IMG/VR virus record: IMGVR_UViG_3300032562_000004
Coordinates: 124,001-188,000 of that record
Strand: one strand, 5' to 3'
Length of the DNA stretch: 64,000 nucleotides
Each line of letters starts with the position of its first letter. Within the stretch, counting starts at the first letter, position 1. This document shows positions 19,600 through 49,097 of the stretch, piece after piece. A model generated the notes under the pieces. That model was not told where the DNA came from. It did no database searches and was given only the letters and a program-made list of their open reading frames with translations. Made by a program: the position numbers and the translations under genes.

Positions 19600-19935
19600 T
19601 TTGTGGAACGATTGTTTCTGTTGCCAAGTACAATCGCTGGAAAACTCCGACAGGTGTTTAGGCTGCCAGTGCGTAACTTTCATCGTTAGCGTTTAATTTA
19701 ATTTGCTTCTTCGACCGAGTGTCCTCAATCCTAACGGCTTTCGCTTTGCCGATTCTCCATTGTTCTAATTATTGCCATGTCGAAACCGGTCGCCCACATC
19801 AAAAACATATTAGCTGGTAATACTCACTCCATTAAAAACCTGCCGTTGTGACTGGTTCACTAATATGCTTATGGTGTAGGCGGGGAGAATCGAACTCCCG
19901 TCCACAACAACTTTCAAACAACTTCAACGAATGTG
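19600..19935 (-). ncRNA. ssrA: Circularly permuted (two-piece) tmRNA, tag ANDESYALAA (outer ends approximate)
   Basis: T-arm + CGCCTACACCA (ends 19872), a 74-nt intervening segment, then GTGGGCGACCGGTTTCGAC (G1=19797); G3.U70; tag frame 19690-19658. Confidence 0.92.
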
Positions 19936-20052
19936 TATCAATAATGGTCCTAATCTATAACTAGTATAAACATCGCCATTATTAAATCTAACTTGGCCCC
20001 AATGAAAAATTCCACCACGGTACCAATGTGTCTTATATACTCTAATCTTCAT
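19924..20052 (-). CDS. 42 aa hypothetical protein
   Basis: Own translation MKIRVYKTHWYRGGIFHWGQ...; co-oriented, fills the gap. Confidence 0.35.
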   Translation of the reverse strand: MKIRVYKTHWYRGGIFHWGQVRFNNGDVYTSYRLGPLLIHIR

Positions 20053-20105
20053 GTCCGACCCACCACCTATTTTATTCGAAATAGGAAACCATTATATCAT
20101 TATAT

Positions 20106-20768
20106 TTATGCTTTGGCAACATTTTTTTGGTAATAATCAATCGCTTTCACCAATCCAGGTATGTGGTCATCGGTTTTCTGCTGAAATACCAATGGTGCTT
20201 CATTCTCTACCGCCATGATAATTACCAGATTATCAATTGGTGTACCAATCATTTCTTCATACATCAAAGCATATGCGGATGTTTGCCAAAAGTAATCTTC
20301 AATGTGTGCCATTTCTTTTATTTTCTTTGATGTTTTAAAGTCAATAACAGATAATACACCATCAAATTCACCAATACAATCCACACGACCTGCCATGCCT
20401 AATTGTTTAGACCATAATGCACATTCTTGATAATGAATATTGTTGATACGATTTAATTCTGGCTTAATTGATTGGAACATCTCCAACGCATCAGGCATGA
20501 TTGTGCCTAACTTCTCATTGTTTAGATATCTCTCGCACAAGGTGTGTACATTGGTGCCACGACCTGTTGCTTGTTTAGAGATTCTATTGGCTTCTGCTTC
20601 ACCAACTCTCTTACGCCATTTCATGATACCCTCTTTCTTTTGGGCGCCAATCACAGTAGTAACAGACGGCAATTTAGAACCATCAGGTAGAGTATAGTAC
20701 CTCATACCATCAGGAAAGGTTTCAGATTTTAAATCAATGAGGTCTTTTGGTGGGCAAAAAGTAAACAT
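20106..20768 (-). CDS. PD-(D/E)xK (Cas4/RecB-like) exonuclease
   Basis: PSVTTVIG...GRGTNVH...AGRVDCIGEFDGVLSVIDFKTS. Confidence 0.85.
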   Translation of the reverse strand: MFTFCPPKDLIDLKSETFPDGMRYYTLPDGSKLPSVTTVIGAQKKEGIMKWRKRVGEAEANRISKQATGRGTNVHTLCERYLNNEKLGTIMPDALEMFQSIKPELNRINNIHYQECALWSKQLGMAGRVDCIGEFDGVLSVIDFKTSKKIKEMAHIEDYFWQTSAYALMYEEMIGTPIDNLVIIMAVENEAPLVFQQKTDDHIPGLVKAIDYYQKNVAKA

Positions 20769-21544
20769 TATTTTTTATTTCTATAATTATCTAATTCAGC
20801 TTCAAACTTAGCTGCTTGTTCAGGAGTAATAACAGTAGCATCAATTCGTTTTCTCAACTCATCAGCATAATTCTGTAATTGTGTAATATCACCCTCATAG
20901 TGAAAATTCTTTGTAACATGTTTTGTATCATAGGCATCAATTAATAGATTATATCTATCAGTATCTCCATCATTTCTAATTTGATGCCATTTATTTACCC
21001 ATAAGATGTAAGCAGAACCATCAGCAGGCATATGTAGATTTTCACCTTCACAAATGAATACACATTTTGGATTTGTCCATAACGGAATATGAATTCGTGC
21101 CATGTATTCTTGTTCAGGTCCATCAGAATGTACCACAGATTTTGAACCAGCTTTTAGATTAGTAATTCTAGCACGCCTGGTGTAGAAACCCAATTCATCC
21201 AATTGGTCTAATACTTTCTTAATTTCACCGACACAACCTTGTGTTGGGTTTTTATATTCTAATGAATGTGCAATATCCAAATATTTTAGTGTTTCATAGT
21301 TATTGGCACCTTTGGGAAAGAATACTTCTTCTAATGTAGTACCTTCTTCATTCTGAAAGAAAGCAAACCCATCACGCCAATCACCAGTACGACTTTGTAA
21401 ACTGTAACCACCAAATCCATTATATTGTGGGGTTTCATATTCTTTACCTTGAATACATTCTCCACCCAATGTAAATACACTACGTTTAACTTCTTCTCTT
21501 AACTTTTCAATGTCGACTTTGAAATCTAATTTTTCATAGAACAT
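20768..21544 (-). CDS. Asp/Asn beta-hydroxylase-like 2OG-Fe(II) oxygenase
   Basis: RARITNL.AG....HSD...RIHIPLWTN...WHQIRNDG.TDRYNLLID. Confidence 0.8.
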   Translation of the reverse strand: MFYEKLDFKVDIEKLREEVKRSVFTLGGECIQGKEYETPQYNGFGGYSLQSRTGDWRDGFAFFQNEEGTTLEEVFFPKGANNYETLKYLDIAHSLEYKNPTQGCVGEIKKVLDQLDELGFYTRRARITNLKAGSKSVVHSDGPEQEYMARIHIPLWTNPKCVFICEGENLHMPADGSAYILWVNKWHQIRNDGDTDRYNLLIDAYDTKHVTKNFHYEGDITQLQNYADELRKRIDATVITPEQAAKFEAELDNYRNKK

Positions 21545-22128
21545 TATAATACACCTTTCAACATTTCAATGGTACTCTTATCAAATGTACCCAAATTGGA
21601 AGTTAATGATATTCTTGGTTGATTAGACCTGTTTTGTTCTACACTATGTAATACAAAACCTGGAAAGAATACTAACTTACTTTCTTTAGCTTTAATACGA
21701 TTAAACTTAGAACCATTCACACCATCGTTACCTGAATCCCAATCACAACCATTTCTAGGATCAATTAATAACAGGTCACCACAATTCTCAGGTGCTTGTA
21801 TATAATAAGTCATAGCAATCTTTGGTCCACCGTGTCCGTGTATGGCCATAGATTCACCTGGATTATTATAATTTACCCAACCTCTGTTGTGCCAATATTC
21901 AAAACCATCAACATAGTTGTGTGCCACATAATCATAAGTTTGTTCTTTGATTACCTTTAATGTATATTCTCTAAGTTCATTTAACCTTTTAGAATCGTTT
22001 GTCCAAACATTTGATGTTGGTTTGAATGATGTAATTTCATTCCACAATTCAATATTAAATTGTCTATCAAAATCAGTTTGTATCTCCCAAACAGGAGTAA
22101 CCCACATATCAGTTTTGTTTATAATCAT
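21544..22128 (-). CDS. 2OG-Fe(II) oxygenase (TIGR02466-like)
   Basis: GWVNYNNPGE....HGH...YYIQAP...LVFFPGFVLHSV...RISL. Confidence 0.82.
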   Translation of the reverse strand: MIINKTDMWVTPVWEIQTDFDRQFNIELWNEITSFKPTSNVWTNDSKRLNELREYTLKVIKEQTYDYVAHNYVDGFEYWHNRGWVNYNNPGESMAIHGHGGPKIAMTYYIQAPENCGDLLLIDPRNGCDWDSGNDGVNGSKFNRIKAKESKLVFFPGFVLHSVEQNRSNQPRISLTSNLGTFDKSTIEMLKGVL

Positions 22129-22667
22129 AAATGACCAGTTTCTTTCAACATATCACACACAGCAGCATAATCATAAGTTGCTGTAGCCAGAGTAATTGCT
22201 ACTCTATTTTTAATTCCTGATAATGGTGTAACTGAATGAGGTTTTGTTACATCTAAAATGTATACATCACCTGGTTCAGCAATGTAGTTACCATTAATCA
22301 ATAAATCTTCTTTATCATAAATGAAACCGTGTCCTGTTTGGTTCTCGATTCTGTGTTTCTTTGGGTCATCATTCTTAAATGTAAAGAACTCTGTTACACA
22401 ATTATCCGTTTCGACATAAAAGTTAATTGTTACCAAATCACAATCAGTATGTGGTGGTATTACTGTATTAATCTCCATCAATGATACACAGAACATATTA
22501 CGATATCGTTCAGGAATATATTCTATCACAGATTTATAATCTTGGCAATCCACATTAAGATATTTGATACCTTTGAACTCACCATCTACCACTTCACCGA
22601 ATGTTACTTGTTCAGTCAATGGTTTGTAACCAGTAATTGTGAATGGTTTATTTAATTTTTGGAACAT
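22125..22667 (-). CDS. 2OG-Fe(II) oxygenase-like protein
   Basis: IPPHTD (HxD) and LDVTKPHSV (distal His). Confidence 0.65.
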   Translation of the reverse strand: MFQKLNKPFTITGYKPLTEQVTFGEVVDGEFKGIKYLNVDCQDYKSVIEYIPERYRNMFCVSLMEINTVIPPHTDCDLVTINFYVETDNCVTEFFTFKNDDPKKHRIENQTGHGFIYDKEDLLINGNYIAEPGDVYILDVTKPHSVTPLSGIKNRVAITLATATYDYAAVCDMLKETGHL

Positions 22668-30865: not shown

Positions 30866-30866
30866 T

Positions 30867-33209: not shown

Positions 33210-33367
33210 CACCTTATTGAAATACATCAACCCTAGAAGTTTCGAACCTTCTAAGTAACCCATCGGAATCTGTGTCGACCATAGTCCGCATATATGTATT
33301 GATTGGCGATGTATTTCAATAAGGTGTCACCGACTTACTGGCGTTTCACAACGAGCATGCGGTGACC
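33210..33367 (-). ncRNA. Intergenic structured element: perfect 19-bp inverted repeat around 79 nt, plus an adjacent hairpin
   Basis: CACCTTATTGAAATACATC (33210-33228) / GATGTATTTCAATAAGGTG (33308-33326); GTCACCG/CGGTGAC. Confidence 0.55.
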
Positions 33368-33779: not shown

Positions 33780-34973
33780 CTACACTTGAGGTTGGTTGGC
33801 AACCTCGGAAGTGGTAGCAATGGTACTCGTATTCGCTGGTGATTCTACTGATGCATCCACTTTTGAATACAAATCTAAAAATGCCATTTTGGTTTCTTCG
33901 TCAAAACGATTCACACACAATGTAATGGCCTTCATTCTATCTTTAAAGATACCAAATGCTTTGGCAATATGTACCAATCGGCGAGTAGAGATAATCTCGT
34001 CAGTAGCACCTTCTTGGTATGATTTACGAACCACATCAGCCCATTGGCAAAGATTCTCAACAAAATCTTTATCATCAAGCAATGGTCCTAAAATCTTTTT
34101 CTCGGTCTTAGCATCAGGGAATTCCTGCTCTACCGTAATCGGGAATCTTTCCAAAAATGCATCATCTAATATCTGTGATAGATATTTGCCTTCATCACTA
34201 CCACGACCTTTGGTATTTGCCGTTGCAATGATATTAAATCCATCTTTTGGATAAACCATTTCACCAGATTTCTTATTGTAATGTGGTTTGCCTTCCATGA
34301 TGCCTTGCAAACACATCAACTTATTAGAACCACGGTCTACTTCGTCAATCAACAATACTGCGCCACGCTTCATAGCAATAAGCACAGGACCATCACGATT
34401 GACCACATTACCATTCACCAATGTAGGACCGCCAAGTAGGTCACTCTCATCAGTTTCGACAGAGATATTCACACGGATACATTCACGATTCAACTCCGCA
34501 CACACCTGTTCGACCATCAAGGTCTTGCCGTTGCCTGATAGACCAGTAACAAATATCGGATAGAATGATTTGCTACCAATGATATTCTTCATATCTTTAT
34601 AGAAACCAAATGGCACATAATCAGGCCATTTCTGTGGTACAGCAGGTTCAGAATCATCTACCAGTTTTGGTTGACGGAACTCCAACACTTGTGCTGGTTG
34701 TGCATATGCCATTTCAGTTTCGGGTTCAATAACTTTACAATCAGCATCGTTTAACTTTACAATACTTTCTTTTAACTTTACAATCTTTTCACCTGATGGT
34801 GGCACTTTGTATTGACCACGGTCATAACGATATTGTGATTTTGTAACCAGCCAATATGGGTATGGTGCATCTGATTCATTACACACTTTGGTAATATCAT
34901 CACGATTCAAAATTGGTTCTGAACCAAAGATTGATTCAGCTGCTACAATAAATTGCTTTGCATTTTTATTCAT
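33780..34973 (-). CDS. MoxR/CbbQ/CobS-like AAA+ ATPase
   Basis: GLSGNGKT Walker A, LLIDEVDR, ATANTKG, AFLERF. Confidence 0.88.
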   Translation of the reverse strand: MNKNAKQFIVAAESIFGSEPILNRDDITKVCNESDAPYPYWLVTKSQYRYDRGQYKVPPSGEKIVKLKESIVKLNDADCKVIEPETEMAYAQPAQVLEFRQPKLVDDSEPAVPQKWPDYVPFGFYKDMKNIIGSKSFYPIFVTGLSGNGKTLMVEQVCAELNRECIRVNISVETDESDLLGGPTLVNGNVVNRDGPVLIAMKRGAVLLIDEVDRGSNKLMCLQGIMEGKPHYNKKSGEMVYPKDGFNIIATANTKGRGSDEGKYLSQILDDAFLERFPITVEQEFPDAKTEKKILGPLLDDKDFVENLCQWADVVRKSYQEGATDEIISTRRLVHIAKAFGIFKDRMKAITLCVNRFDEETKMAFLDLYSKVDASVESPANTSTIATTSEVANQPQV

Positions 34974-38291: not shown

Positions 38292-38897
38292 CTACATTAC
38301 GGGTCCATTCCCATTCTTAAATCCGACTTCCCCTCCCTGCTCTTTAATCCTCTTTAATACATCTTCAAATAAGATTGGAGCAAAGTCGGGTAGTTGTTCA
38401 ACGGACACATTGAAATATCGTGGATCAATCTCGTCGCTATATAGAATTTTGCCGGTCTTGGCATCAACTCCGCGTGGCTTCATTACACGATTGGCGTGGA
38501 GGTGGCCGTGGATTGAGCAACCAAATCTACCTAGCGATTCTTCATGAATAGGAATATGGCTAAGAATCATTCCATTCATCACATGATATGCACGAAGTTC
38601 ACGGAAGTATTTCCGGTAGTCCTCATCTTTAAAAATGTCGTGATTACCACGAATAAGAACCTTGTCTCCGTTAAGTCTATCCATAATAGGCAATGCTTTT
38701 CGATTCATAACAACATCACCTAAGTGGTAAACTTTGTCGTTAGGTCGTACTCTTTCGTTCCATGCTGTAATCATGGCCTCATCCATCTCCTCAGCAGAGT
38801 CCCACGGGCGAAGTTTTGTAACCCCATCACTACGAGTGAAGCGACATACACCGGCATGACCAAAGTGTGTATCGCTAACTAAAAATACTGCTGGCAT
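38292..38897 (-). CDS. Calcineurin-like metallophosphoesterase
   Basis: SDTHFGH, YHLGDV, RGNHD, SHIP, HGHLH. Confidence 0.88.
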   Translation of the reverse strand: MPAVFLVSDTHFGHAGVCRFTRSDGVTKLRPWDSAEEMDEAMITAWNERVRPNDKVYHLGDVVMNRKALPIMDRLNGDKVLIRGNHDIFKDEDYRKYFRELRAYHVMNGMILSHIPIHEESLGRFGCSIHGHLHANRVMKPRGVDAKTGKILYSDEIDPRYFNVSVEQLPDFAPILFEDVLKRIKEQGGEVGFKNGNGPVM

Positions 38898-38959: not shown

Positions 38960-39035
38960 TGGTGGAAATGGAGGGATTCGAACCCCCGACCTTGTCCGTA
39001 TGAAGGACCTGCTCTACCAACTAAGCTACATTTCC
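38960..39035 (-). tRNA. tRNA anticodon CAT (elongator Met or Ile2)
   Basis: Cloverleaf, loop TTCATAC, CCA. Confidence 0.85.
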
Positions 39036-39522
39036 GTAAATGAAAAAAGGCGTAGAGTATTATCCCCAAACCTCTTTATATTTTTCTAAAGCCTTTTTTC
39101 TTGCTAACACAAGTCTAATTTTCATTTCATCCGAAATGTCTTGTACATCAGCTGTTTGGTCGACTAGCTCTGGACGACGATATCCAATTTGAAACTCTGG
39201 AGTTTCATCGTAATAGTCATCATCGTTATCATTTAAAAATACACGAGCTAACGGTCGCTTAGGTAGATGTAGTTTTGCCTTCGTTCTTGTGATGATAGCA
39301 CGGACCCGACCGTTTGCTGTCGCAGTTGGGGCAACCCATTCTAAGCGATTGGAATCCAAAGACTGTGCCAACTCGGCTGAGCTTTTCTGGCTTATTATTA
39401 CTAAAGTCGCGAGTGTTAATACTTGTAACAGGGTGGGTATACATGAGTTTCTCCTAAGCATACTATATTAACGCTTAAGAGTTACACTAAGTTGACAATA
39501 ATATTGCCAAAATTATATCTTT

Positions 39523-39597
39523 TGGTCCGGCGTACAGGAATCGAACCCATATTCATCGGGTAGAAGCCGATTGTACTATCCATTGTACTAACGCCAG
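39523..39597 (-). tRNA. tRNA-Arg(TCT)
   Basis: ATCGG-CTTCTAC-CCGAT, CCA. Confidence 0.9.
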
Positions 39598-39600
39598 CTT

Positions 39601-39718
39601 ATATTGAAACACACTAGAAGAACCGTGACGAGCGGATTCATTTACCTTCCTCCAACAAGCGGAAGCCCATACCGGTCAGATATGGTGCCACTACTAAGGA
39701 TTAATGTGCTTCAATATA
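39601..39718 (-). ncRNA. Structured spacer RNA closed by a long inverted repeat
   Basis: ATATTGAAGCACATT / AGTGTGTTTCAATAT enclosing two hairpins. Confidence 0.5.
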
Positions 39719-39721
39719 AAC

Positions 39722-39797
39722 TGGTCCAGGCGCAGAGATTTGAACTCTGAAAGTTCGGGTAAAAGCCGAATATGATAGCCAGTTTCATCACACCTGG
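39722..39797 (-). tRNA. tRNA-Lys(TTT)
   Basis: TTCGG-CTTTTAC-CCGAA, CCA. Confidence 0.85.
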
Positions 39798-39906
39798 ATT
39801 GTTTTTCTTGCTTGCGTAGAGCTTTATTGCTCTTGCGGTGCGAGCCCGCTTTCCGTTTATTTGCTAGTACAGCAAATATATTTCTTGCTTTCATTTTACT
39901 TCTCCT

Positions 39907-40326
39907 TTAAAAATCTGTTAGTGGAACTAGTTCCTCTAAATTTACAACATCGGTCCAATCTTCAATATGGCCCGAGTAGTAACCGTTGTGTTCGTTGCGT
40001 ACTTCAAAATCAATATATCCACGGTTAGTGCGAATAGTAAAGAAGCCATCTTCGACTACTTCTGCGTATTCGTCATCTGTCTCAACATTGACCCACTCTT
40101 TTTCTTCTACAGCAGTAACTAACGCACCACGTAGCAAATCAAAAGTGTTACCTTCTCCAATTACATCTCTACCTTGAAAGTGATTAATGTAAACAGTATT
40201 ACAACAATCGCCACATACATAAAATCCTAATACTTCTCCTTCGATGGTACGAAATGCAACTCTATCATGGTCTTCGTTTAGGAAAATACCATTAATGCGT
40301 TTTCCAACTAGCTTGTTTAAAACCAT
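39907..40326 (-). CDS. Hypothetical protein inside the tRNA array
   Basis: GDCC and RNEHNGYYSG motifs; AGGAG RBS. Confidence 0.6.
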   Translation of the reverse strand: MVLNKLVGKRINGIFLNEDHDRVAFRTIEGEVLGFYVCGDCCNTVYINHFQGRDVIGEGNTFDLLRGALVTAVEEKEWVNVETDDEYAEVVEDGFFTIRTNRGYIDFEVRNEHNGYYSGHIEDWTDVVNLEELVPLTDF

Positions 40327-40358
40327 GCCATTCTCCTTTTAAAATTTAAAACATATTA

Positions 40359-40433
40359 GGGGTGACCTGTGGAATTCGAATCCACCCTATCGGAATCACA
40401 ATCCGAGGTGCTAACCGCTAACACTAAGGCCAC
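40359..40433 (-). tRNA. tRNA-His(GTG)
   Basis: TCGGA-TTGTGAT-TCCGA; C73; 3' end CCT rather than CCA. Confidence 0.88.
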
Positions 40434-40447
40434 ACCTAATATGTCTA

Positions 40448-40523
40448 TGGTGCACCCTCTTGGTTACGCTCCAAGCCATCCAGCTCTTAGAGCTGGCGCT
40501 TCCACTAGGTTAGCTTAGGGTGC
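40448..40523 (-). tRNA. Atypical class I tRNA, anticodon TAA (loop TCTAAGA)
   Basis: Perfect acceptor stem + CCA; C at position 33; T-loop AGCGTAA; short variable loop. Confidence 0.65.
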
Positions 40524-40739
40524 TCTACCTCTTGATATCCAACCATCATAGTTGTCGACATCTTTTACTTCGTCTACTCCTAGTTTACTCGTGCAGTTAG
40601 GATTTTCACTACACATCGTAACAAAGGTATGTCCAAGGCTACGATGGAATTGAGACGCAGATAATGCCATACTTAAATCATCAAACACTTCTGCGTGTGG
40701 TTTATTATCCACAGTATAATAAACTTTAAACATATTCAC
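40515..40739 (-). CDS. Hypothetical protein; stop codon inside the next tRNA
   Basis: FVTMCSENPNCTSKLGVD motif. Confidence 0.55.
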   Translation of the reverse strand: MNMFKVYYTVDNKPHAEVFDDLSMALSASQFHRSLGHTFVTMCSENPNCTSKLGVDEVKDVDNYDGWISRGRAP

Positions 40740-40749
40740 TTTCTAAAAT

Positions 40750-40823
40750 TGGTACCTCGTGATGGTGTCGAACCACCGAGACCCACTTGTAAGGAGGGCA
40801 GTATACCGTTTACTTAACGAGGC
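40750..40823 (-). tRNA. tRNA-Val(TAC)
   Basis: Loop CTTACAA, CCA. Confidence 0.88.
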
Positions 40824-40826
40824 ATT

Positions 40827-40900
40827 TGGTAGAGGTACTAAGATTTGAACTTAGACTAATGCCTTCAAAGGGCACGGTGCTGCCGTTACACTATACCTCA
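40827..40900 (-). tRNA. tRNA-Gln(TTG)
   Basis: GTGCC-CTTTGAA-GGCAT, CCA. Confidence 0.9.
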
Positions 40901-40906
40901 ACAGTT

Positions 40907-40980
40907 TGGTTGCGGGTTCTGGAATCGCACCAGAGACTAGGGCTTATGAGACCCTCGAGATACTCCTTCTCCAACCCGCG
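40907..40980 (-). tRNA. tRNA-fMet(CAT)
   Basis: C1:A72 mismatch, loop CTCATAA, T-loop TGCGATT. Confidence 0.85.
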
Positions 40981-40986
40981 ATAGAT

Positions 40987-41061
40987 TGGTGGACCGTGGG
41001 AGAGTCGAACTCCCTACTCCTGCGTGCAAGGCAGGTGTGTTCCCAATTATACCAACAGCCC
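40987..41061 (-). tRNA. tRNA-Ala(TGC)
   Basis: G3.U70, loop CTTGCAC. Confidence 0.92.
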
Positions 41062-41493
41062 TAAATTCTTTTGCCATTCATTAATAAATGGCAATACTTC
41101 GTGTTTCCATTTGCTATGAACCATCTCGTGATGATTTGGGCATAGCGGTATTAAATTACTGGGCTTGTTATTTTTTCTATTCTCATCAATATGATGGATA
41201 GCAACAATCTTGTCAAACCCGCAAATAATACACTTGTGTTCGTGATGCTGTTTTGCTATAGTCGCATAATGTGTGGCATTGTCTTTCCACCAAGAGCTTC
41301 TGTTATTAGCACAACTTCTACTACAAAATCTAGCTGTTTCAAATTGTTTGGTATTTTGTCTACCAGTCCAAACAAATTCTTTATTACAGCATCCGCAAAT
41401 TTTAGTATGATCTTTTACTGGACCATACTTTCTATTTACTTTTGCTATTTGACCAGCTTTATAAGATTCTGTATAATATTTTCCGTTATTCAT
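41047..41493 (-). CDS. HNH endonuclease
   Basis: CIICG...IHHIDENRKNNKPSNLIPLCPNHH. Confidence 0.85.
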   Translation of the reverse strand: MNNGKYYTESYKAGQIAKVNRKYGPVKDHTKICGCCNKEFVWTGRQNTKQFETARFCSRSCANNRSSWWKDNATHYATIAKQHHEHKCIICGFDKIVAIHHIDENRKNNKPSNLIPLCPNHHEMVHSKWKHEVLPFINEWQKNLGLLV

Positions 41494-41508
41494 AATTTTT
41501 AATTACTT

Positions 41509-41582
41509 TGGAGCGGGTAGAGAGAATCGAACTCTCAACTAAACCTTGGCAAGGTCTCGGGTTACCATTACACCATACCCGC
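41509..41582 (-). tRNA. tRNA-Gly(GCC)
   Basis: Loop TTGCCAA, TCCA end. Confidence 0.9.
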
Positions 41583-41586
41583 AAAT

Positions 41587-42102
41587 TTATAAAATACTTT
41601 CTAATAACTTCCTAACATCTAATGTAATAGGTTGTAAGTTATTTACTACTGTAGAATCTTTACATATCCAATTAGCAACAGGCAGTCCTGGTTTTAAATT
41701 AAACTGCCCGCTTTTTGTTTCAAGATTCCTATTACATTCGTCCCACGATAATTGCGATATAGCAAACTTATGCGGGGCTGACTGAATACATAACAAATAA
41801 TCAAATGATTGATTAAATTTAGACTTATTAGTATTTTGAAGTGAAACTCGTCCTGTAATTGTATTCTTCGGTGAAAACATATCAGCTACTGATTTAAATT
41901 CATATTTTGTATTAGTTTCTAAATCAATGCTATCATATCCTTCCTGGTCAACATACTTTAATCTTCCGTCTGTTGCTTTCTCTAATGCTAATGCTAGAAC
42001 TTCGCCTTTGAGAAATCTATAAGATGGCTTATTAAGTTGCTTGCCAAGTTTAACTAAACAATCAACTACGGGTTGATAATCTACATCCTTCAAAAAACTC
42101 AT
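41587..42102 (-). CDS. Putative PD-(D/E)xK endonuclease between two tRNA-Gly genes
   Basis: GYDSIDLETNTKYEFKS (D...ExK). Confidence 0.5.
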   Translation of the reverse strand: MSFLKDVDYQPVVDCLVKLGKQLNKPSYRFLKGEVLALALEKATDGRLKYVDQEGYDSIDLETNTKYEFKSVADMFSPKNTITGRVSLQNTNKSKFNQSFDYLLCIQSAPHKFAISQLSWDECNRNLETKSGQFNLKPGLPVANWICKDSTVVNNLQPITLDVRKLLESIL

Positions 42103-42116
42103 AAGTTCCTTTAATT

Positions 42117-42190
42117 TGGAGCGGGATAAGAGAATCGAACTCTTGACCGAAGATTGGAAATCTGCTGTTTTACCATTAAACTAATCCCGC
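42117..42190 (-). tRNA. tRNA-Gly(TCC)
   Basis: Loop TTTCCAA, TCCA end. Confidence 0.9.
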
Positions 42191-42192
42191 AT

Positions 42193-42375
42193 TGGTGTCG
42201 TAACGGCAGGGCCCTTCAGGATGAGTTACGACGTTACTACATTGAGGCATTGCACCGTAGCTTACGCTACCCCCATCAACTGCCTCAAATTTTGTGTAGG
42301 GCTTCCACCTACTCCCACCTCGCTTTAAAGTCTGCGTGTCCAAGACTTAGTTCTATTGCTAGAACTGAAAATGTT
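42193..42375 (-). ncRNA. Multi-hairpin RNA ending in an 8-bp stem + ACCA; not a cloverleaf
   Basis: Five hairpins; GTCGTAAC/GTTACGAC-ACCA. Confidence 0.55.
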
Positions 42376-42389
42376 ACTTTCTAATACTT

Positions 42390-42415
42390 TGGTACCTCGG
42401 GCCGGAATCGAACCG
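42390..42415 (-). pseudogene. Orphan 3' fragment (T-arm + acceptor strand) of a tRNA, probably Leu
   Basis: CGGTTCGATTCCGGCCCGAGGTACCA with no 5' half. Confidence 0.75.
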
Positions 42416-42427
42416 TTCGCGTTATAT

Positions 42428-42513
42428 TGGTGCCCGGAGCCGGACTCGAACCGGCATGCCTTTTAAAGCGGAAGATTTTAAGTCTTCTATGTATACCATT
42501 TCATCACCCGGGC
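42428..42513 (-). tRNA. tRNA-Leu(TAA)
   Basis: GAAGA-CTTAAAA-TCTTC, long variable arm. Confidence 0.92.
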
Positions 42514-42968
42514 GTTTGATCTATCTTGCGCCAACCTTTAGGTTTACCACCTTTTCTGTTAGCGGCAATTTTTGCCTTATGTTCTTCCGACTTTGGTTTT
42601 CCTTTATTTCCAGATCCATTAGTATTACCTAACATTACTTTGCTATTCATAGCAGATGCTTTTTCTAAACCATATTTTTCAACACGGCGTTCAAAAGGAT
42701 TTTTATGTGTCCCAAACTCTTTACCATCAATGATGATATTATCGTAATCAGTGCCCCAATACAAATGTTTTGGATTACTACATTTACTATTATTACAAGC
42801 ATGACACAACAGTATGCGCCCGCTTGGAATAGTTGTATCTAAATATTGTGCTAATACACCTTTATGATTAGTAGAGTTACCGCCGCGTTCACAACAAGGC
42901 TCGGATAAGTCTAAGTGAGCCCTGCGTTCTTCGCGAGATTTTTTAATAAATTCTTCTACTATAATCAT
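42504..42968 (-). CDS. HNH-type endonuclease with NUMOD3-like tail (start at MIIVEE)
   Basis: LCHACNNSKCSNPKHLYWGT..DN; GKPKSEEHKAKIA. Confidence 0.78.
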   Translation of the reverse strand: MIIVEEFIKKSREERRAHLDLSEPCCERGGNSTNHKGVLAQYLDTTIPSGRILLCHACNNSKCSNPKHLYWGTDYDNIIIDGKEFGTHKNPFERRVEKYGLEKASAMNSKVMLGNTNGSGNKGKPKSEEHKAKIAANRKGGKPKGWRKIDQTPG

Positions 42969-43009
42969 AACAGTATTATATAGTAATAATTTATTACTGT
43001 CAAATATTT

Positions 43010-43094
43010 TGGTGGGCAAGGAGAGACTCGAACTCTCACGCCTTGCGGCACTGGCTTCTAAGACCAGCATGGCTACCAATTACATCACTCACCC
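43010..43094 (-). tRNA. tRNA-Leu(TAG)
   Basis: CTGGT-CTTAGAA-GCCAG, long variable arm. Confidence 0.92.
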
Positions 43095-43559
43095 ATTTAC
43101 TACTTTTAAACCTTTTAATCTATCTGCGGCATAACTAGCCGCAAACGCTTGTGGCTTAACTAGTGGCTCTACATTACATACGCCACGGATATAACCAATA
43201 GCTTGACTTACAACATTAGAACTAGCATGAATTTCGTTAGGATTAATATCTAAATGTACTTCTACAGCACGACCTTCTAATACTTCTGCTAATTTTAAAT
43301 ACAATTCACTAACCTTAAACACTTCAGTCATTAATCTAGTATTAGGTTTATCACAACGGTCATAATCTCGTTCTCTAGTCACTTCACCAAATAACTTACA
43401 ACCGTGATTACCGTCAATATGTACAACAATAGCGGCTGTATAGTCAGCATACCATTCTTTGCCACGCTTAATTCGTTCAGAGTCCACACCAATATAAATC
43501 TTAGTGTCTGGACCTTGAGCATCTATAAACTTTTTGATTTGTGGTATGTTAAACTTCAT
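43089..43559 (-). CDS. RNase H-like YkuK/DUF458 family protein (start at MKFNIP)
   Basis: IYIGVDS...RLMTEV...EVHLDIN...KPQAFAASYAAD. Confidence 0.78.
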   Translation of the reverse strand: MKFNIPQIKKFIDAQGPDTKIYIGVDSERIKRGKEWYADYTAAIVVHIDGNHGCKLFGEVTRERDYDRCDKPNTRLMTEVFKVSELYLKLAEVLEGRAVEVHLDINPNEIHASSNVVSQAIGYIRGVCNVEPLVKPQAFAASYAADRLKGLKVVNG

Positions 43560-43580
43560 TATTCTCTTTCTTAAGTTATT

Positions 43581-43654
43581 TGGCGTCCCGGCAGGGATTC
43601 GAACCCCGACCAACAGTTTTGGAGACTGCGATGCTACCGTTACACTACCAAGAC
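43581..43654 (-). tRNA. tRNA-Trp(CCA)
   Basis: Loop CTCCAAA. Confidence 0.92.
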
Positions 43655-43674
43655 GTTGTACTACTATTTAATGT

Positions 43675-43751
43675 TGGTGCCTCAACCTAGACTCGAACTA
43701 GGGACCCTTGCGTTATCAACACAATGCTCTAACCAACTGAGCTATTGAGGC
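43675..43751 (-). tRNA. tRNA-Ile(GAT)
   Basis: Loop TTGATAA. Confidence 0.92.
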
Positions 43752-43752
43752 A

Positions 43753-43829
43753 TGGTGGGTCTTGAGAGACTCGAACTCCCAACCGCTAGTTTCGAAGACT
43801 AGAACTCTAATCCATTGAGCTAAAGACCC
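43753..43829 (-). tRNA. tRNA-Arg(TCG)
   Basis: CTAGT-CTTCGAA-ACTAG. Confidence 0.92.
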
Positions 43830-43834
43830 ATGTT

Positions 43835-43929
43835 TGGTAGTAGATATAGGTTATGATCCTATCCGTTGCAGCCCATCTGACCACTCTCCCAGGTTTATAA
43901 AACCCGGCCGCACACCAGTGCTATCTACC
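43835..43929 (-). tRNA. Atypical 95-nt tRNA, anticodon TAT (reads Ile AUA)
   Basis: 7-bp acceptor + ACCA; 4-nt D-loop; loop TTTATAA; long variable arm; T-loop ATCATAA. Confidence 0.7.
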
Positions 43930-43939
43930 ATATTGTTAT

Positions 43940-44026
43940 TGGCGGAAAGTATTGGAGTCGAACCAATCCACCCATTGCTGAATGACAGATTAGCAATCTG
44001 TTGCCTTGCCGCTCGGCCAACTTTCC
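43940..44026 (-). tRNA. tRNA-Ser(GCT)
   Basis: Loop TTGCTAA, G73, long variable arm. Confidence 0.92.
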
Positions 44027-44035
44027 TTAATTGTT

Positions 44036-44130
44036 TGGCGGAAGACAGAGGAGTCGAACCCCACCCGGCTCTTCACCAGGACCTGGTTTTCAAGGCCAGT
44101 CGCAGGACCATCCCCGCTGCATTATCTTCC
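44036..44130 (-). tRNA. tRNA-Ser(TGA) with enlarged D-arm
   Basis: Loop CTTGAAA, G73, long variable arm. Confidence 0.85.
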
Positions 44131-44136
44131 ATATTG

Positions 44137-44212
44137 TGGCTCCCCGAGCTGGGCTCGAACCAGCGACACCGTGATTAACAGTCACGTACTCTACCAACTG
44201 AGCTATCAGGGA
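44137..44212 (-). tRNA. tRNA-Asn(GTT)
   Basis: Loop CTGTTAA. Confidence 0.93.
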
Positions 44213-44220
44213 ATTGTTTT

Positions 44221-44298
44221 TGGTCTGTGAGGTAGGATTCGAACCTACAGCCTCCTGACTCCAGATCAGGCCGTCTACCAGATTGACATTACACACAG
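44221..44298 (-). tRNA. tRNA-Pro(TGG), non-canonical C33
   Basis: CCTGA-TCTGGAG-TCAGG; C1-G72, A73. Confidence 0.8.
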
Positions 44299-44306
44299 AT
44301 TGTTAC

Positions 44307-44381
44307 TGGTGCCCCAGAATGGAATCGAACCACCGAACCCGGCTTACAAGACCGGACCTTTACCACTAAGGATACAAGGGC
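44307..44381 (-). tRNA. tRNA-Thr(TGT)
   Basis: CCGGT-CTTGTAA-GCCGG. Confidence 0.9.
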
Positions 44382-44764
44382 TATTTTCTGTCTCTACCAT
44401 TTCCTTTATTTTTAGCCTTATATGTAGGCGTCTGACTATGGCAGTTTGGGCATATTGCCCTTAAATTTTCTTCTTTGTTATTTTTATAATTCCCGTCGAT
44501 ATGATCTAATTCTAGATATAGCGGAAGACCATTATGTTCTTCGATACCACAAATAAGACATTTATTATTTTGTTTTGCCCTTATATAACGATGTATATAC
44601 ATACTAGTTTGATGTTTGCCTCGAAGGCCATCTTCTAAACCAGACTTCCACCGTTCTATGTAACTTTGATGCATTCCTTCTAAGTAATGCTTGCCACAAT
44701 AGATTCTTTTTTCTTTATGTGTAAATACCGTAGAACATATTTTACAGCTATATTTTTGTAACAT
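44381..44764 (-). CDS. HNH endonuclease
   Basis: CLICG...LELDHIDGNYKNNKEENLRAICPNCHSQTPTY. Confidence 0.88.
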   Translation of the reverse strand: MLQKYSCKICSTVFTHKEKRIYCGKHYLEGMHQSYIERWKSGLEDGLRGKHQTSMYIHRYIRAKQNNKCLICGIEEHNGLPLYLELDHIDGNYKNNKEENLRAICPNCHSQTPTYKAKNKGNGRDRK

Positions 44765-44780
44765 ATAATCTTTCTTTAAC

Positions 44781-44857
44781 TGGCACTCTGTAGGGGTGAC
44801 GATCCCCTCTTACCAACGTGAAAGGCTGGGGTCCTAACCAACATAGACGAACAGAGT
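44781..44857 (-). tRNA. tRNA-Glu(TTC)
   Basis: Loop CTTTCAC; T-loop ATCGTCA. Confidence 0.85.
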
Positions 44858-44863
44858 ATAACT

Positions 44864-44941
44864 TGGCGTCCTCACCGGGTGTCGATCCCGGTCCTACACC
44901 TTGAAAGGGTGTTGATCTAGCCAATCGTAATCTATGAGGAC
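44864..44941 (-). tRNA. tRNA-Glu(TTC), second copy
   Basis: ACACC-CTTTCAA-GGTGT; T-loop ATCGACA. Confidence 0.85.
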
Positions 44942-44947
44942 ATAACT

Positions 44948-45022
44948 TGGCGACTCCAGGGAGTAACGATCTCCCTCTTCCTCTTAGACAGAGAGGTGTG
45001 CGTCCATGAACACTTTGGAGCC
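44948..45022 (-). tRNA. tRNA-Asp(GTC)
   Basis: CCTCT-CTGTCTA-AGAGG; T-loop ATCGTTA. Confidence 0.85.
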
Positions 45023-45027
45023 TTTGT

Positions 45028-45101
45028 TGGTTGCGGGCTAGGGTAACGCTCCCTATTCCATCCTGGCTTATGAGACCGGAGTGTGGCTATCACAACCCGC
45101 A
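45028..45101 (-). tRNA. Initiator-like tRNA-Met(CAT) with short D-arm
   Basis: GCGGG acceptor, loop CTCATAA, T-loop AGCGTTA. Confidence 0.7.
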
Positions 45102-45109
45102 ATAGTTGT

Positions 45110-45187
45110 TGGAGGAACGGGTCGGATTCGAACCGACGACTTTACAGTTTTGCAGACTGTTGCTTTGGGCCACTCAGCCACCGTTCC
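45110..45187 (-). tRNA. tRNA-Cys(GCA)
   Basis: Loop CTGCAAA, U73. Confidence 0.92.
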
Positions 45188-45196
45188 GTTATTGTT

Positions 45197-45281
45197 TGGT
45201 GGGTGGTCATGGAGTCGAACCAAGTATGCCAGAGGCGTCTGATTTACAGTCAGGTGCGGTCGCCAGTGCCGCTCACCACCC
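45197..45281 (-). tRNA. tRNA-Tyr(GTA)
   Basis: Loop CTGTAAA, long variable arm. Confidence 0.92.
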
Positions 45282-45285: not shown

Positions 45286-45505
45286 AACGCTCTCTTTAGA
45301 AAGCGTGTAATAAAGCATACTAAGGCAATCATTTTTGCGCTGTGGAAAAGCGCCATGTCTTCGATCCGCGATGCCATTGACGGACCAGGTCTTTTAGTAT
45401 GCTTTATTACGCTGTAGTTTTTTGCTCCACAAAAGGAGTTTCATCGTACAGGCCGCCCGTTTACTAGATGTTTTAAGTGCCTAGCGTGGACCTCGTTCCC
45501 ACATA
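45286..45505 (-). ncRNA. Structured leader of the tRNA array with a perfect 16-bp helix
   Basis: TAATAAAGCATACTAA / TTAGTATGCTTTATTA plus flanking hairpins. Confidence 0.5.
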
Positions 45506-45950: not shown

Positions 45951-45979
45951 ATTATAATGCTTAATTAATTCTTTGTCAA
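45951..45979 (-). promoter_or_regulatory. Consensus sigma70 promoter of the leader peptide
   Basis: TTGACA-17 nt-TATAAT. Confidence 0.85.
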
Positions 45980-46067
45980 CCTTCTTTTTTACTTCTCTGA
46001 ACTTTTATTTACCTAATGTTGCAATTATACGCATATTTCCATTGAAAGTCAACCACTTTTGGTAAAA

Positions 46068-46322: not shown

Positions 46323-46360
46323 AGAAGTATTTACGAGCCCAGAACTTTCATTATATGCTA

Positions 46361-46975
46361 TTAATTGATTAGATCTTCTATAGATTTTTCGAACCCCACT
46401 GTAATTACTAATCTCGGTCCTGGGCTCAAATGTACGGTATGCACATAGTCTGTGCGTACAAATGCGCTAGGAGTTAGTAAATTTGATTCTGCAGCCGTAG
46501 CAGGGCCTAAATATTCCATTTTTTCTGCTACTGTTGTTCCTGGCATAGTTAGCCCAGTAAAAGGTAATCCAGTTCGAGTACTTACTTGAGTAATCGAGTA
46601 TAGTCTTTTATCAGTATGATGAAAATCGGTCCACCAATGCATAGGATCTTCTGGATTACCTTTTATTAATATATTAAATCTACTTTTTAAAATTTTATGG
46701 TTTTCGTTATCCACATGGGGTCTTCCATAACCTTGATTTTCTAAATTAGCTAAATGTGCGGTTATGATTAGATTGGATGTATCACAATTATATTGCGACA
46801 AATAATTTAATAATTCTTGTCCAGCACTTACTTCACGCCATTCGTGCTGTAACTTTCTTTGATCCCAATCTAAATTATGATAAAAATTTTCATTAAAATG
46901 ATTTTTATATCGATTAAGTATCCAATCTTTAGCTTCCTGCGAAAAATCAAAATCTGTTTTATGGAATAGTAACAT
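46361..46975 (-). CDS. 2OG-Fe(II) oxygenase-like protein, tandem paralogue 2
   Basis: RPHVD (HxD), SAFVRTDYVHTV, PRLVITV. Confidence 0.6.
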   Translation of the reverse strand: MLLFHKTDFDFSQEAKDWILNRYKNHFNENFYHNLDWDQRKLQHEWREVSAGQELLNYLSQYNCDTSNLIITAHLANLENQGYGRPHVDNENHKILKSRFNILIKGNPEDPMHWWTDFHHTDKRLYSITQVSTRTGLPFTGLTMPGTTVAEKMEYLGPATAAESNLLTPSAFVRTDYVHTVHLSPGPRLVITVGFEKSIEDLIN

Positions 46976-48106: not shown

Positions 48107-48121
48107 TCTATATTTACCAAC

Positions 48122-48146
48122 AAAAAAAGGACCCGAAGGCCCTTTT
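48122..48146 (-). terminator. Intrinsic terminator with UUCG loop
   Basis: AAGGGCC-TTCG-GGTCCTT-TTTTT. Confidence 0.85.
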
Positions 48147-48163
48147 AGTTTAACTCGTAAAAA

Positions 48164-48616
48164 TTAGAACGAGTACTTAACACCTGCGGTTACGATGTTG
48201 CCATTGTAAGCCTTAGTAATGTTATTACCTTTTTGGTAGGCATAATCAGCTACCAAATTTACATTCTTAACTACAGGATAGGCAATCCCTGCGCCAATAA
48301 ATCCAGCACCACCATTACCTACGCCAGGTTTTTGTGTGTCAATAAATGCAGCTCCAGCACGAACATTAGTTTGTACGGGACCTAGTTTGATAACGTCATA
48401 ACTCACAGATGCTGTGTAACGATTAACATCAACAGCATTGGTAGTACTACGATCAAAAGTTCCTTGAACGCCAATTGCGCCAAATGATTGACCAACAGAA
48501 ACGCCTGCGGTATCTTGTTTAGAGCCCATGTTGCGGCCACCAAAAACACCAACGTCAGTTGCGAAAGCAAAAGTAGTTGATGCTAATAATGCTACTGCTA
48601 AAATTACTTTTTTCAT
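48164..48616 (-). CDS. Small outer-membrane beta-barrel protein (OmpA/Lom-like)
   Basis: Signal peptide, amphipathic strands, C-terminal GVKYSF. Confidence 0.8.
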   Translation of the reverse strand: MKKVILAVALLASTTFAFATDVGVFGGRNMGSKQDTAGVSVGQSFGAIGVQGTFDRSTTNAVDVNRYTASVSYDVIKLGPVQTNVRAGAAFIDTQKPGVGNGGAGFIGAGIAYPVVKNVNLVADYAYQKGNNITKAYNGNIVTAGVKYSF

Positions 48617-48736
48617 ACTAATAGTTCCTTTATGTTTATACTACTGAACAAATATTTATTGTTTTTTTGCGTTGGCCTGCAAAAATTGCTAGGTTTTGGC
48701 ATATTTTTAAGTTTAATATACGCATATAATGAAGTC

Positions 48737-48764
48737 AAAAGAATAGGGGTCGAAGCCCCTATCT
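48737..48764 (-). terminator. Terminator at the end of the tmRNA coding piece
   Basis: ATAGGGGC-TTCG-ACCCCTAT-TCTTTT. Confidence 0.8.
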
Positions 48765-49097
48765 GTTATTTTCTGTTTCGACGGATAACTCCGCAAAGCA
48801 GTGATTAAACTGCTAATGTTTGGCGTTGTGCTGTACGAGCAGAGAAACGAATTCCCTTACCTGAAACAGTTACTTCGCCTTTAGATGCGTTTGCATTTAA
48901 GTTTTTCGCTTGATTTACAGTCATCGCCTACTGTGTTGCCTCTTTCATTATCTCACCATGTCGAAACCTTGTCATCCCCACTGAAACATACTACAGCTTT
49001 TGGCCTCGCTACCGATAACTCGGTTCGGTAATATGCTTCGGTGGAGATGCCGGGAATCGAACCCGGGTCCACAGCGCCTTCACTACGAAGGAATTAC
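48765..49097 (-). ncRNA. ssrA: Second circularly permuted tmRNA, 29-aa tag ANASKGEVTVSGKGIRFSARTAQRQTLAV (outer ends approximate)
   Basis: GGACCCGGGTTCGATTCCCGGCATCTCCACC, an intervening segment, then GGGGATGACAAGGTTTCGAC (G1=48979); G3.U70; tag frame 48894-48805. Confidence 0.9.

What the first reader, a model, noticed from the sequence alone, without database searches (positions are those of the whole stretch)
19798..49039. One helix family encloses both tmRNA intervening segments, tRNA-His and three unexplained RNAs
Arm pairs (minus strand): AAGCATATTAG/CTAATATGTTT (19798-19871); GAAATACATC/GATGTATTTC (33210-33326); GAAGCACATT/AGTGTGTTTC (39601-39718); AGACATATTAG/CTAATATGTTT (40348-40446, around tRNA-His); AAAGCATACTAA/TTAGTATGCTTT (45310-45415); GAAGCATATTAC/GTAGTATGTTTC (48980-49039). 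The sequence as well as the pairing is similar, roughly AA(G/A)CAYAY on the left arm. This suggests a shared cleavage signal that excises or releases cargo RNAs, so the cargos at 33.2, 39.6 and 45.3 kb may be distinct small RNAs.
Basis: partly seen in the sequence, partly recalled or inferred. Interest (0 to 1): 0.7.

Follow-up and report, generated by a model that had tools for sequence, protein, structure and literature searches.

The report
Phage tRNA-array RNA stems with swappable cargo
A lake phage and hundreds of its uncultured relatives use one conserved double-stranded RNA stem of about 20 base pairs to bracket very different small RNAs inside their tRNA gene arrays; it looks like a shared RNA-processing handle, and I found no description of it.

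Summary
All six arm pairs are present, and they rank among the longest inverted repeats of the region. Stems with this core are about tenfold more frequent than in shuffled sequence.

The pairing works only on the tRNA-sense strand (G.U 104 vs A.C 11 in an unbiased sample). It covaries, so it is an RNA structure.

The same helix recurs as 311 distinct elements in 180 fetched viral loci, almost always in tRNA arrays. Its consensus is ACCAUAUU-N-AARCAYAYU paired with its complement. The pattern occurs once in 185,579 cellular species genomes.

The arms are better conserved (79-85%) than the flanking tRNAs (53-66%). The enclosed cargo falls into about 204 unrelated clusters.

All three "unexplained" cargos have homologues in other phages, always inside this helix but at other genomic positions. 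The 33.2-kb cargo belongs to a covarying three-way-junction family of at least 10 members.

Cleavage is not shown, because no usable RNA data exist. The best reading is a processing stalk cut by a double-strand-specific nuclease, most likely host RNase III. The phage encodes no RNase III.

The YkuK-like protein is not strictly linked. One complete genome has the helices without the gene, and phage DLP_6 has the gene without the helices.

The parts
19803..19870 (-). Hairpin that forms the intervening segment of permuted tmRNA 1. The arms are 19859-19870 and 19803-19814 (12 bp, one G.U) and the loop is 44 nt. The left arm starts 1 nt after the CCA of the acceptor piece and the right arm ends 5 nt before the 5' G of the coding piece. 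With two mismatches the helix extends to 19791-19882.
33210..33326 (-). Helix-cargo element between two protein genes: a 20-bp stem and a 77-nt cargo. The cargo belongs to a conserved three-way-junction RNA family, which in relatives sits between tRNA-Thr or tRNA-Tyr and the tmRNA.
39594..39724 (-). Helix-cargo element that fills the spacer between tRNA-Lys(UUU) and tRNA-Arg(UCU): a 23-bp stem with G.U pairs and an 85-nt cargo. The left arm begins in the CCA end of tRNA-Lys and the right arm runs into the first bases of tRNA-Arg. A cargo homologue lies in L094 in a different genomic context.
40349..40446 (-). 12-bp leader/trailer helix that encloses tRNA-His (40359-40433). The leader GG pairs with C74 and C75, and position -1 is U. 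The core resembles the family only in this phage.
45305..45412 (-). Helix-cargo element upstream of tRNA-Tyr: 17 Watson-Crick bp, with a few more pairs beyond a bulge, and a 70-nt cargo. It lies about 100 nt downstream of a sigma70-like promoter (45538-45510). A cargo homologue in L059 lies in the Lys-Arg spacer there.
48983..49039 (-). Hairpin that forms the intervening segment of permuted tmRNA 2: 12 bp with two G.U pairs and a 33-nt loop. It lies between the ...CACC 3' end of the acceptor piece and the GGGG 5' end of the coding piece.
19567..19966 (-). Permuted (two-piece) tmRNA gene 1, tag ANDESYALAA.
48714..49131 (-). Permuted (two-piece) tmRNA gene 2, with a long tag ending in LAV. A terminator-like hairpin follows at 48763-48742.
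38960..45281 (-). Array of 24 tRNA genes, all on the minus strand, with small ORFs interspersed. It is the setting for three of the helices.
43089..43613 (-). YkuK-like RNase H-fold protein (PF04308/DUF458) inside the array. It is the protein gene most often found near the helices, but it is not strictly linked to them.
38292..38897 (-). Calcineurin-like phosphoesterase next to the array. It is shared by the helix-bearing genomes compared and absent from DLP_6. Any role in the helix system is unknown.

Best explanation
The helix is an RNA-level closing stem, typically 19-20 bp, with a conserved 8-bp core (ARCAYAYU paired with ARURUGYU, often with a U.G wobble). It serves as a common punctuation and processing module in the polycistronic tRNA / tmRNA / small-RNA transcripts of this phage clade. 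The transcripts appear to start at host-type promoters. The stem folds between the 3' CCA of one RNA and the 5' leader of the next, or across the break of a two-piece tmRNA. A double-strand-specific endoribonuclease, most likely the host's RNase III, then cuts both arms. That would free the flanking tRNA or tmRNA pieces with short tails, which RNase P and 3' exonucleases would finish. It would also release the enclosed cargo as a stem-capped, stable small RNA. Shown here by computation: the structure, its strand, its covariation, its positions and the conservation of the cargos. Inferred only: that the helix is cut, and by which enzyme.
For: The structure is at the RNA level. In a sample retrieved with a strand-neutral pattern, non-Watson-Crick pairs in tRNA-sense orientation are G.U 104 against A.C 11. 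Sense-strand stems outnumber antisense stems 83 to 33, and 39 to 10 at 19 bp or more. The two unconstrained helix positions pair in 202 of 226 cells against 162 +/- 3 in shuffles.

The position fits processing. 26 of 29 distinct tRNA-Lys(UUU) genes are followed at their CCA end by a helix of 9 bp or more, found without using the motif. In about half of the 29 distinct phage permuted tmRNAs, the longest stem found is a hairpin that starts at the CCA and ends a few bases before the GGGG 5' end; in 12 it carries the strict core. This is exactly where an RNA cut is obligatory.

The geometry fits. The unbroken stems cluster at 17-23 bp (modal 19-20), about two helical turns, in a sample partly selected for such stems. 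The conserved core lies near the middle of the longest (23-bp) stems.

The arms are under stronger constraint (79-85% identity) than the flanking tRNAs (53-66%), while the cargo is only 23% identical.

The units are co-oriented behind consensus sigma70-like promoters.

The element is virus-specific: at least 120 viral contigs against one hit in 185,579 cellular species genomes. Of 80 pattern-retrieved loci, 79 carry tRNAs.

From my own knowledge, not tested here: rRNA processing stalks and the T7 early-RNA RNase III sites are precedents for flanking helices, and for sequence-conserved RNase III sites in phages.
Against: No RNA ends were observed. The only RNA runs hold relatives' conserved tRNA or tmRNA parts as contigs, and some of those contigs run through a helix arm, so they are unprocessed RNA or DNA.

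The phage encodes no RNase III, and the host is unknown.

The arm sequence is nearly invariant across diverse phages. That is more than a structure-specific host enzyme would be expected to need, and it hints at a sequence-specific partner.

The tmRNA hairpins and the tRNA-His helix have only 12 unbroken bp, which is short for a classical RNase III substrate.

No cellular genome carries the sequence, so it is not a copy of a host processing site.
Confidence: 0.45

Rival explanations
1. The stem is a handle for a dedicated, sequence-specific factor encoded by the phage. This could be the YkuK-like RNase H-fold protein or an unidentified protein. The factor would bind or cut the conserved 8-bp core, so the helix would be a private recognition tag rather than a generic double-stranded RNA substrate.
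For: The arms are more conserved than the neighbouring tRNAs. Copies within one genome seem to share variants of the variable helix positions (by eye). There is a recurrent U.G at one core position, in 45 of 71 elements. The element is virus-specific. The YkuK-like gene is the array protein most often found beside the helices: 18 of 80 partial loci, against 13 or fewer for any other protein.
Against: G002, a 400-kb genome rated complete, has the helices and 27 tRNAs but no PF04308 match. DLP_6 has a YkuK-like gene at 59% identity and 38 tRNAs but no helices. A four-genome presence/absence profile gave no nuclease-like candidate. It returned only sugar epimerases, endolysins, a GIY-YIG homing endonuclease, 7-deazaguanine genes, a phosphoesterase and three unknowns.
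Confidence: 0.2
2. The stem is not cut. It would be a folding insulator and stabiliser that closes each cargo RNA, keeps neighbouring tRNAs from misfolding, and protects ends. The cuts would be made next to it by RNase P, RNase E and exonucleases.
For: The long closing stems give very stable folds. The cargos are conserved structured RNAs that would benefit from a clamp. In L173 the inner 7 bp of a family helix are the acceptor stem of a tRNA that scores above the Rfam threshold, so there the helix is part of the product.
Against: In the two-piece tmRNAs the hairpin must be removed to free the CCA end, and a stable 12-bp hairpin blocks 3' exonucleases. Where the left arm contains the CCA of the upstream tRNA, the helix has to be opened or cut for that tRNA to mature. 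Pure structural roles do not explain the sequence conservation.
Confidence: 0.18
3. The inverted repeats act at the DNA level. They would be folded single-strand recombination sites (like integron attC sites) or the terminal repeats of a miniature mobile cassette, which would explain why cargos move between positions.
For: The same cargo families occur in different helices and genomic positions in different phages. At a syntenic position the cargo is replaced outright while the arms stay. Folded single-strand DNA sites can also be strand-specific.
Against: The complete genome has no tyrosine recombinase and no Y1 transposase. The arms start precisely in tRNA CCA ends and at tmRNA break points, which makes sense for RNA but not for DNA sites. 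The cargo stems covary as in a functional RNA. All elements lie on the transcribed strand of co-oriented arrays.
Confidence: 0.07
4. The repeats are chance products of AT-rich sequence.
For: The genome is 36% G+C, and short AT-rich stems are common.
Against: Stems are about tenfold or more in excess over shuffles. 311 distinct elements share one core in 180 loci. There is covariation and strand asymmetry.
Confidence: 0.01

Closest known systems
RNase III processing stalks (16S/23S rRNA precursors; T7 early-RNA RNase III sites)
   Same: A helix formed by sequences that flank the released RNA. The length is about two helical turns. The sites punctuate a polycistronic transcript. In T7 they are also similar to each other in sequence (own knowledge).
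   Different: Cleavage is not demonstrated here. The arms are nearly invariant across hundreds of phages while the enclosed RNA is freely exchanged. The helix often includes the CCA end of a tRNA. The phage has no RNase III gene.
Intervening segment of permuted (two-piece) tmRNA genes of Alphaproteobacteria, a betaproteobacterial lineage and cyanobacteria
   Same: The gene order is acceptor piece, then an excised segment, then the coding piece. Both tmRNAs match the Rfam permuted models.
   Different: Here the excised segment is a member of a helix family that the same phages also use between tRNAs and around other RNAs. I know of no such shared module reported for cellular two-piece tmRNAs, and none came up in the papers I searched.
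Phage T4 stable RNAs of unknown function in the tRNA cluster (species 1 and 2, RNA C and RNA D)
   Same: Small, stable, structured non-tRNA RNAs encoded within a T4-like phage's tRNA gene cluster. Species 1 RNA was reported to be cut by RNase III (own knowledge).
   Different: No sequence similarity to any of 50,697 GenBank phage records, T4 among them. The common closing helix and the cargo diversity are not known for T4.
Archaeal bulge-helix-bulge motifs
   Same: One RNA motif marks excision sites in very different precursors: tRNA introns, permuted and split tRNAs, and rRNA stalks.
   Different: There is no bulge-helix-bulge geometry here; the stems are continuous. No splicing endonuclease or RNA ligase was found. 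The setting is a bacterial phage.
Integron attC sites
   Same: Conserved inverted arms around a variable-length terminal structure, strand-specific folding, and a modular array.
   Different: No integrase is present. The attC R-box consensus is not seen in the arm consensus. The arms abut RNA ends. The variable part is itself a conserved, covarying RNA.
Y RNAs (Ro-binding stem plus a variable, sometimes tRNA-like, module)
   Same: A conserved stem formed by the 5' and 3' ends, with a variable module inside that in some cases has a T-arm-like hairpin.
   Different: The genome has no Ro/TROVE and no RtcB gene, and there is no Rfam Y RNA match.

Membership tests
RNase III processing stalk | Double-stranded RNA helix of about 20 bp or more, formed by the sequences that flank the released RNA | tested here: met
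   The stems at 33.2, 39.6 and 45.3 kb have 20, 23 and 17 bp. The family mode is 19-20 bp. The two tmRNA hairpins and the His helix have only 12 unbroken bp.
RNase III processing stalk | Staggered cleavage of both arms by RNase III | not testable with these tools
   No usable transcript data exist: the RNA runs hold only relatives' conserved parts as contigs.
RNase III processing stalk | An RNase III enzyme is available | tested here: inconclusive
   The phage genome, rated 100% complete, has no PF14622 or PF00636 match. The host is unknown. Most bacteria have RNase III (8 of the tool's 14 control genomes matched).
Permuted two-piece tmRNA | Acceptor piece upstream of the coding piece, with a segment between the CCA and the 5' G | tested here: met
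   ARAGORN calls both genes permuted. Rfam RF04321 scores 118 and 104 bits, and RF01850 and RF01849 are above threshold. The sequence was read.
Permuted two-piece tmRNA | Excision of the intervening segment to give two RNA pieces | not testable with these tools
   No RNA ends are available.
Integron attC / folded single-strand DNA recombination site | A cognate tyrosine recombinase or Y1 transposase | tested here: not met
   No PF00589 and no PF01797 match in the complete genome.
Y RNA / Ro system | A Ro (TROVE) protein and a Y-RNA-like stem | tested here: not met
   No PF05731 match and no Rfam Y RNA hit, even at permissive E-values.
Any described RNA family (Rfam 15) | A match of the helix or the cargos to a curated covariance model | tested here: not met
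   Only tRNA and tmRNA models match. The cargos give nothing better than chance miRNA hits at E 0.2-4.
   A helix-positive complete genome (G002) lacks PF04308. DLP_6 has PF04308 but lacks helices. 18 of 80 partial loci have both.

The most novel reading that the evidence does not exclude
The helix would be the universal handle of a phage-specific small-RNA cassette system. A constant, sequence-specific stem would be recognised by a dedicated partner that has not yet been identified. It would display more than 200 kinds of short structured cargo RNAs, some derived from tRNAs, and phages would exchange these cargos among themselves. The cargos would be a new class of phage effector RNAs, for example decoys or inhibitors aimed at host tRNA-targeting or RNA-targeting defences. 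The use of the stem in tmRNA and tRNA maturation would be the same handle put to work for processing.
Probability: 0.25. Interest if true: 0.88.

Novelty: new variant of a known kind. Interest (0 to 1): 0.72.

Why it matters
Large phages carry tRNA arrays whose maturation is barely studied outside T4. This element offers a concrete, testable rule for how such arrays are cut up, including how phage two-piece tmRNAs are split.

It also exposes a large, unannotated set of conserved small RNAs: about 200 cargo types in the contigs sampled here. They are easy to find because they share one stem.

If the stem is recognised in a sequence-specific way, it could become a compact tool for RNA processing or RNA display. 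A cultured phage-host pair that carries the element exists, so experiments are feasible: Synechococcus phage BUCT-ZZ01 on S. elongatus PCC 7942.

Tried and rejected
**Transcript ends.** Two run searches and two read layings found only DNA metagenomes of the phage, plus RNA contigs of relatives' conserved tRNA or tmRNA parts. No ends could be read.

**Rfam.** Searches at gathering and at permissive thresholds on the window, the cargos and four element-rich loci found only tRNA and tmRNA.

**Phage-encoded enzymes in the complete genome.** None of these was found: RNase III, Ro/TROVE, RtcB, CCA-adding enzyme, RNA ligases (the Rnl1 model did not ring in any control, so that negative is weak), tyrosine recombinase, Y1 transposase.

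**Antisense targets.** The cargos have no meaningful antisense match in the phage's own genome.

**Cultured phages.** The array, the tmRNA, a consensus element and the three cargos have no close relative among 50,697 GenBank phage records. BUCT-ZZ01 carries variant helices; I found them by scanning the locus fetched through its YkuK-like gene.

**Presence/absence profile.** I compared three helix-bearing genomes with DLP_6. No nuclease candidate emerged.

**Literature.** Searches for DUF458 with tRNA, two-piece tmRNA in phages, RNase III in tRNA clusters, tRNA arrays, and the arm sequence itself found no description of the element.

**Other stems in the window.** The extra stems at 34608-34714 (inside an AAA ATPase gene) and 46558-46665 (no family core) are not counted as members.

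Full report
**Setting.** The window is bases 124001-188000 of a 235,812-bp viral contig from lake water. The contig has 36% G+C and is rated complete. It shares T4-type core genes with Stenotrophomonas phage DLP_6 and Synechococcus phage BUCT-ZZ01. The window holds 26 tRNA genes and two permuted (two-piece) tmRNA genes, all on the minus strand. Consensus sigma70-like promoters on that strand precede the units.

**The observation.** All six arm pairs are present at the stated places, and they are longer than reported:
- The element at 39594-39724 has 23 bp and occupies the entire spacer from the CCA of tRNA-Lys(UUU) to the first bases of tRNA-Arg(UCU).
- The element at 33210-33326 has 20 bp, and the one at 45307-45410 has 17 Watson-Crick bp.
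- The helix around tRNA-His and the two tmRNA hairpins have 12 unbroken bp each.

Five of the six are among the eight longest inverted repeats of the 31-kb stretch. Across the genome, core-bearing stems of 12 bp or more number 5 against 0.5 in shuffles, and stems of 15 bp or more number 3 against 0.05. Chance is excluded.

**RNA, not DNA.** Several pairs are G.U on the minus strand and would be A.C mismatches on the plus strand.
- In 62 non-identical related loci fetched through the YkuK-like protein, sense-strand stems outnumber antisense stems 83 to 33. At 19 bp or more the ratio is 39 to 10.
- In a second set, retrieved from IMG/VR with a pattern that treats both strands alike, the non-Watson-Crick pairs in tRNA-sense orientation are G.U 104 and A.C 11.
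- The two helix positions that the pattern left free pair in 202 of 226 cells, against 162 +/- 3 after shuffling, with GC, AT, TA and CG all used.

**Anatomy.** The consensus is a 19-bp stem, ACCAUAUU-N-AARCAYAYUA paired with its complement. The core is ARCAYAYU opposite ARURUGYU. U.G is the commonest pair at one core position, in 45 of 71 elements, and an A.C mismatch recurs at one outer position. Unbroken stems cluster at 17-23 bp, with a mode of 19-20, though this sample is partly biased by the search pattern.
- The left arm often begins with the discriminator and CCA of the upstream tRNA (Lys, Thr, Tyr, Leu).
- The right arm ends 0-16 nt before the next tRNA or the tmRNA.
- Without using the motif, 26 of 29 distinct tRNA-Lys(UUU) genes are followed by such a helix.
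- In about half of the 29 distinct phage permuted tmRNAs, the longest stem found is a hairpin from the CCA to a few bases before the 5' GGGG. In 12 it has the strict core, and several others have near variants.

**Spread.** Of the first 80 loci, 79 carry tRNAs and 75 carry three or more. The same pattern occurs once in one genome each of 185,579 bacterial and archaeal species, on a 1.5-kb contig of a freshwater MAG. In all, 311 distinct elements were found in 180 loci, with up to nine per fetched stretch. Some phages have tandem runs of helix-cargo units with few tRNAs between them. Among cultured phages only BUCT-ZZ01 showed variants. No Rfam family and no paper I could search describes the element.

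**Arms against cargo.** At the syntenic Lys-Arg spacer, mean pairwise identity is 79-85% for the arms, 53-66% for the two tRNAs and 23% for the cargo. Cargos fall into 204 clusters, 151 of them singletons, with a median length of 46 nt. Yet the cargos are not junk, because each of the window's three has a homologue elsewhere:
- The 33.2-kb cargo aligns with eight elements that in other phages lie between tRNA-Thr or tRNA-Tyr and the tmRNA. The consensus is a three-way junction with 37 pairs, 15 of which show compensatory changes. A covariance model finds a tenth member.
- The 45.3-kb cargo recurs at 77% identity in L059, there in the Lys-Arg spacer.
- The 39.6-kb cargo recurs in L094 in yet another context, with a compensatory change in its first hairpin.

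So cargo families move between sockets while the socket stays. Some cargos are tRNA-like. In L173 the inner 7 bp of a family helix are the acceptor stem of a tRNA that scores above the Rfam threshold. Several cargos end in a T-arm-like hairpin.

**tRNA-His.** The helix around tRNA-His has a family-like core only in this phage. Five relatives also enclose tRNA-His in a leader/trailer helix, but with other sequences. All share GG, then an unpaired U, then the tRNA, then C73, then CC pairing back to the GG. This may be a separate feature of tRNA-His precursors, which here lack an encoded G-1.

**Mechanism.** Position is the main argument for processing. The helix sits exactly where RNA must be cut: after CCA ends, before 5' ends, and at the break of both tmRNAs. 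A two-turn helix with a conserved centre, in transcripts from host-type promoters, fits a double-strand-specific endonuclease. Host RNase III is the default candidate, because the phage has none. After such a cut, RNase P and 3' exonucleases would finish the flanking RNAs, and the cargo would remain as a stem-capped small RNA. None of this is shown, because the public RNA data were uninformative.

The near invariance of the arm sequence argues for a sequence-specific partner. I could not identify one:
- The YkuK-like gene is the commonest array protein near the helices (18 of 80 partial loci). However, a complete 400-kb genome has helices without it, and DLP_6 has it without helices.
- A four-genome profile gave no nuclease candidate.
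- DNA-level models lack a recombinase or transposase and do not explain why the arms start in CCA ends.
- Ro/Y-RNA, RtcB and RNA-ligase models found no support.

**Verdict.** As far as Rfam 15 and the searchable literature show, the element is undescribed. I classify it as a new variant of the processing-stalk idea. It remains possible that it is a new modular system of phage small RNAs.

Noticed in passing
window 40359-40433 (minus); L023, L028, L041, L044, L045: tRNA-His has U at position -1, so no G-1 is encoded. Its C74 and C75 pair with a GG in the leader. The same 'GG, U, tRNA, C73, CC' leader/trailer helix recurs in five relatives with different helix sequences. How these tRNAs obtain, or do without, G-1 is open.
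   Followed up: partly
window 48714-49131 (minus): The second permuted tmRNA encodes an unusually long tag, ANASKGEVTVSGKGIRFSARTAQRQTLAV. Similar long tags occur in L012 and L059. The phage therefore carries two different tmRNAs.
   Followed up: no
L173:1-2661 and L152:2100-5450 (tRNA-sense orientation): These are tandem runs of seven and nine helix-cargo units with few canonical tRNAs between them. In some phages the elements form arrays of their own.
   Followed up: partly
L173:1181-1303: A family-type 22-bp helix whose inner 7 bp are the acceptor stem of a tRNA that scores 40 bits in Rfam. The tRNA has a 21-nt insertion in the anticodon arm.
   Followed up: partly
window 38292-38897 (minus): A calcineurin-like phosphoesterase (PF00149, phrog_547) lies next to the tRNA array. 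It is 55-72% identical in the helix-bearing genomes G002, G011 and BUCT-ZZ01, absent from DLP_6, and present in 28 of 62 and 13 of 80 related loci. It may be an RNA-end healing enzyme; I did not test this.
   Followed up: partly
window 57892-58746 (minus) and genome 188666-190308: QueE-like, QueD-like and GTP cyclohydrolase I genes suggest a 7-deazaguanine modification pathway. They are shared by the helix-bearing genomes compared.
   Followed up: no
window 46558-46665: A perfect 15-bp inverted repeat with a 78-nt loop lies inside ORF 46361-46975. It has no family core and is kept in L007 at 91% identity.
   Followed up: no
window 41047-41493, 44381-44764, 50362-50964 (minus); genome 20863-21303: HNH, NUMOD3 and SegE-like GIY-YIG homing-endonuclease genes lie in and near the tRNA array.
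   Followed up: no
window 43835-43929 (minus): ARAGORN calls a 95-nt tRNA-Ile(UAU) with the anticodon at position 31. Rfam's tRNA model gave no match above threshold there. It may be an atypical or interrupted tRNA.
   Followed up: no
window 34608-34714 (minus): A 12-bp stem with a core-like GGCAUAUG lies inside the AAA_5 ATPase gene 33780-34973. It is probably chance and is not counted as a member.
   Followed up: no
window 19784 flank, RNA runs X38 and X44: Metatranscriptome contigs of a related tmRNA continue upstream of the coding piece's 5' end into a helix arm of family type. They are either unprocessed precursor or contaminating DNA.
   Followed up: no
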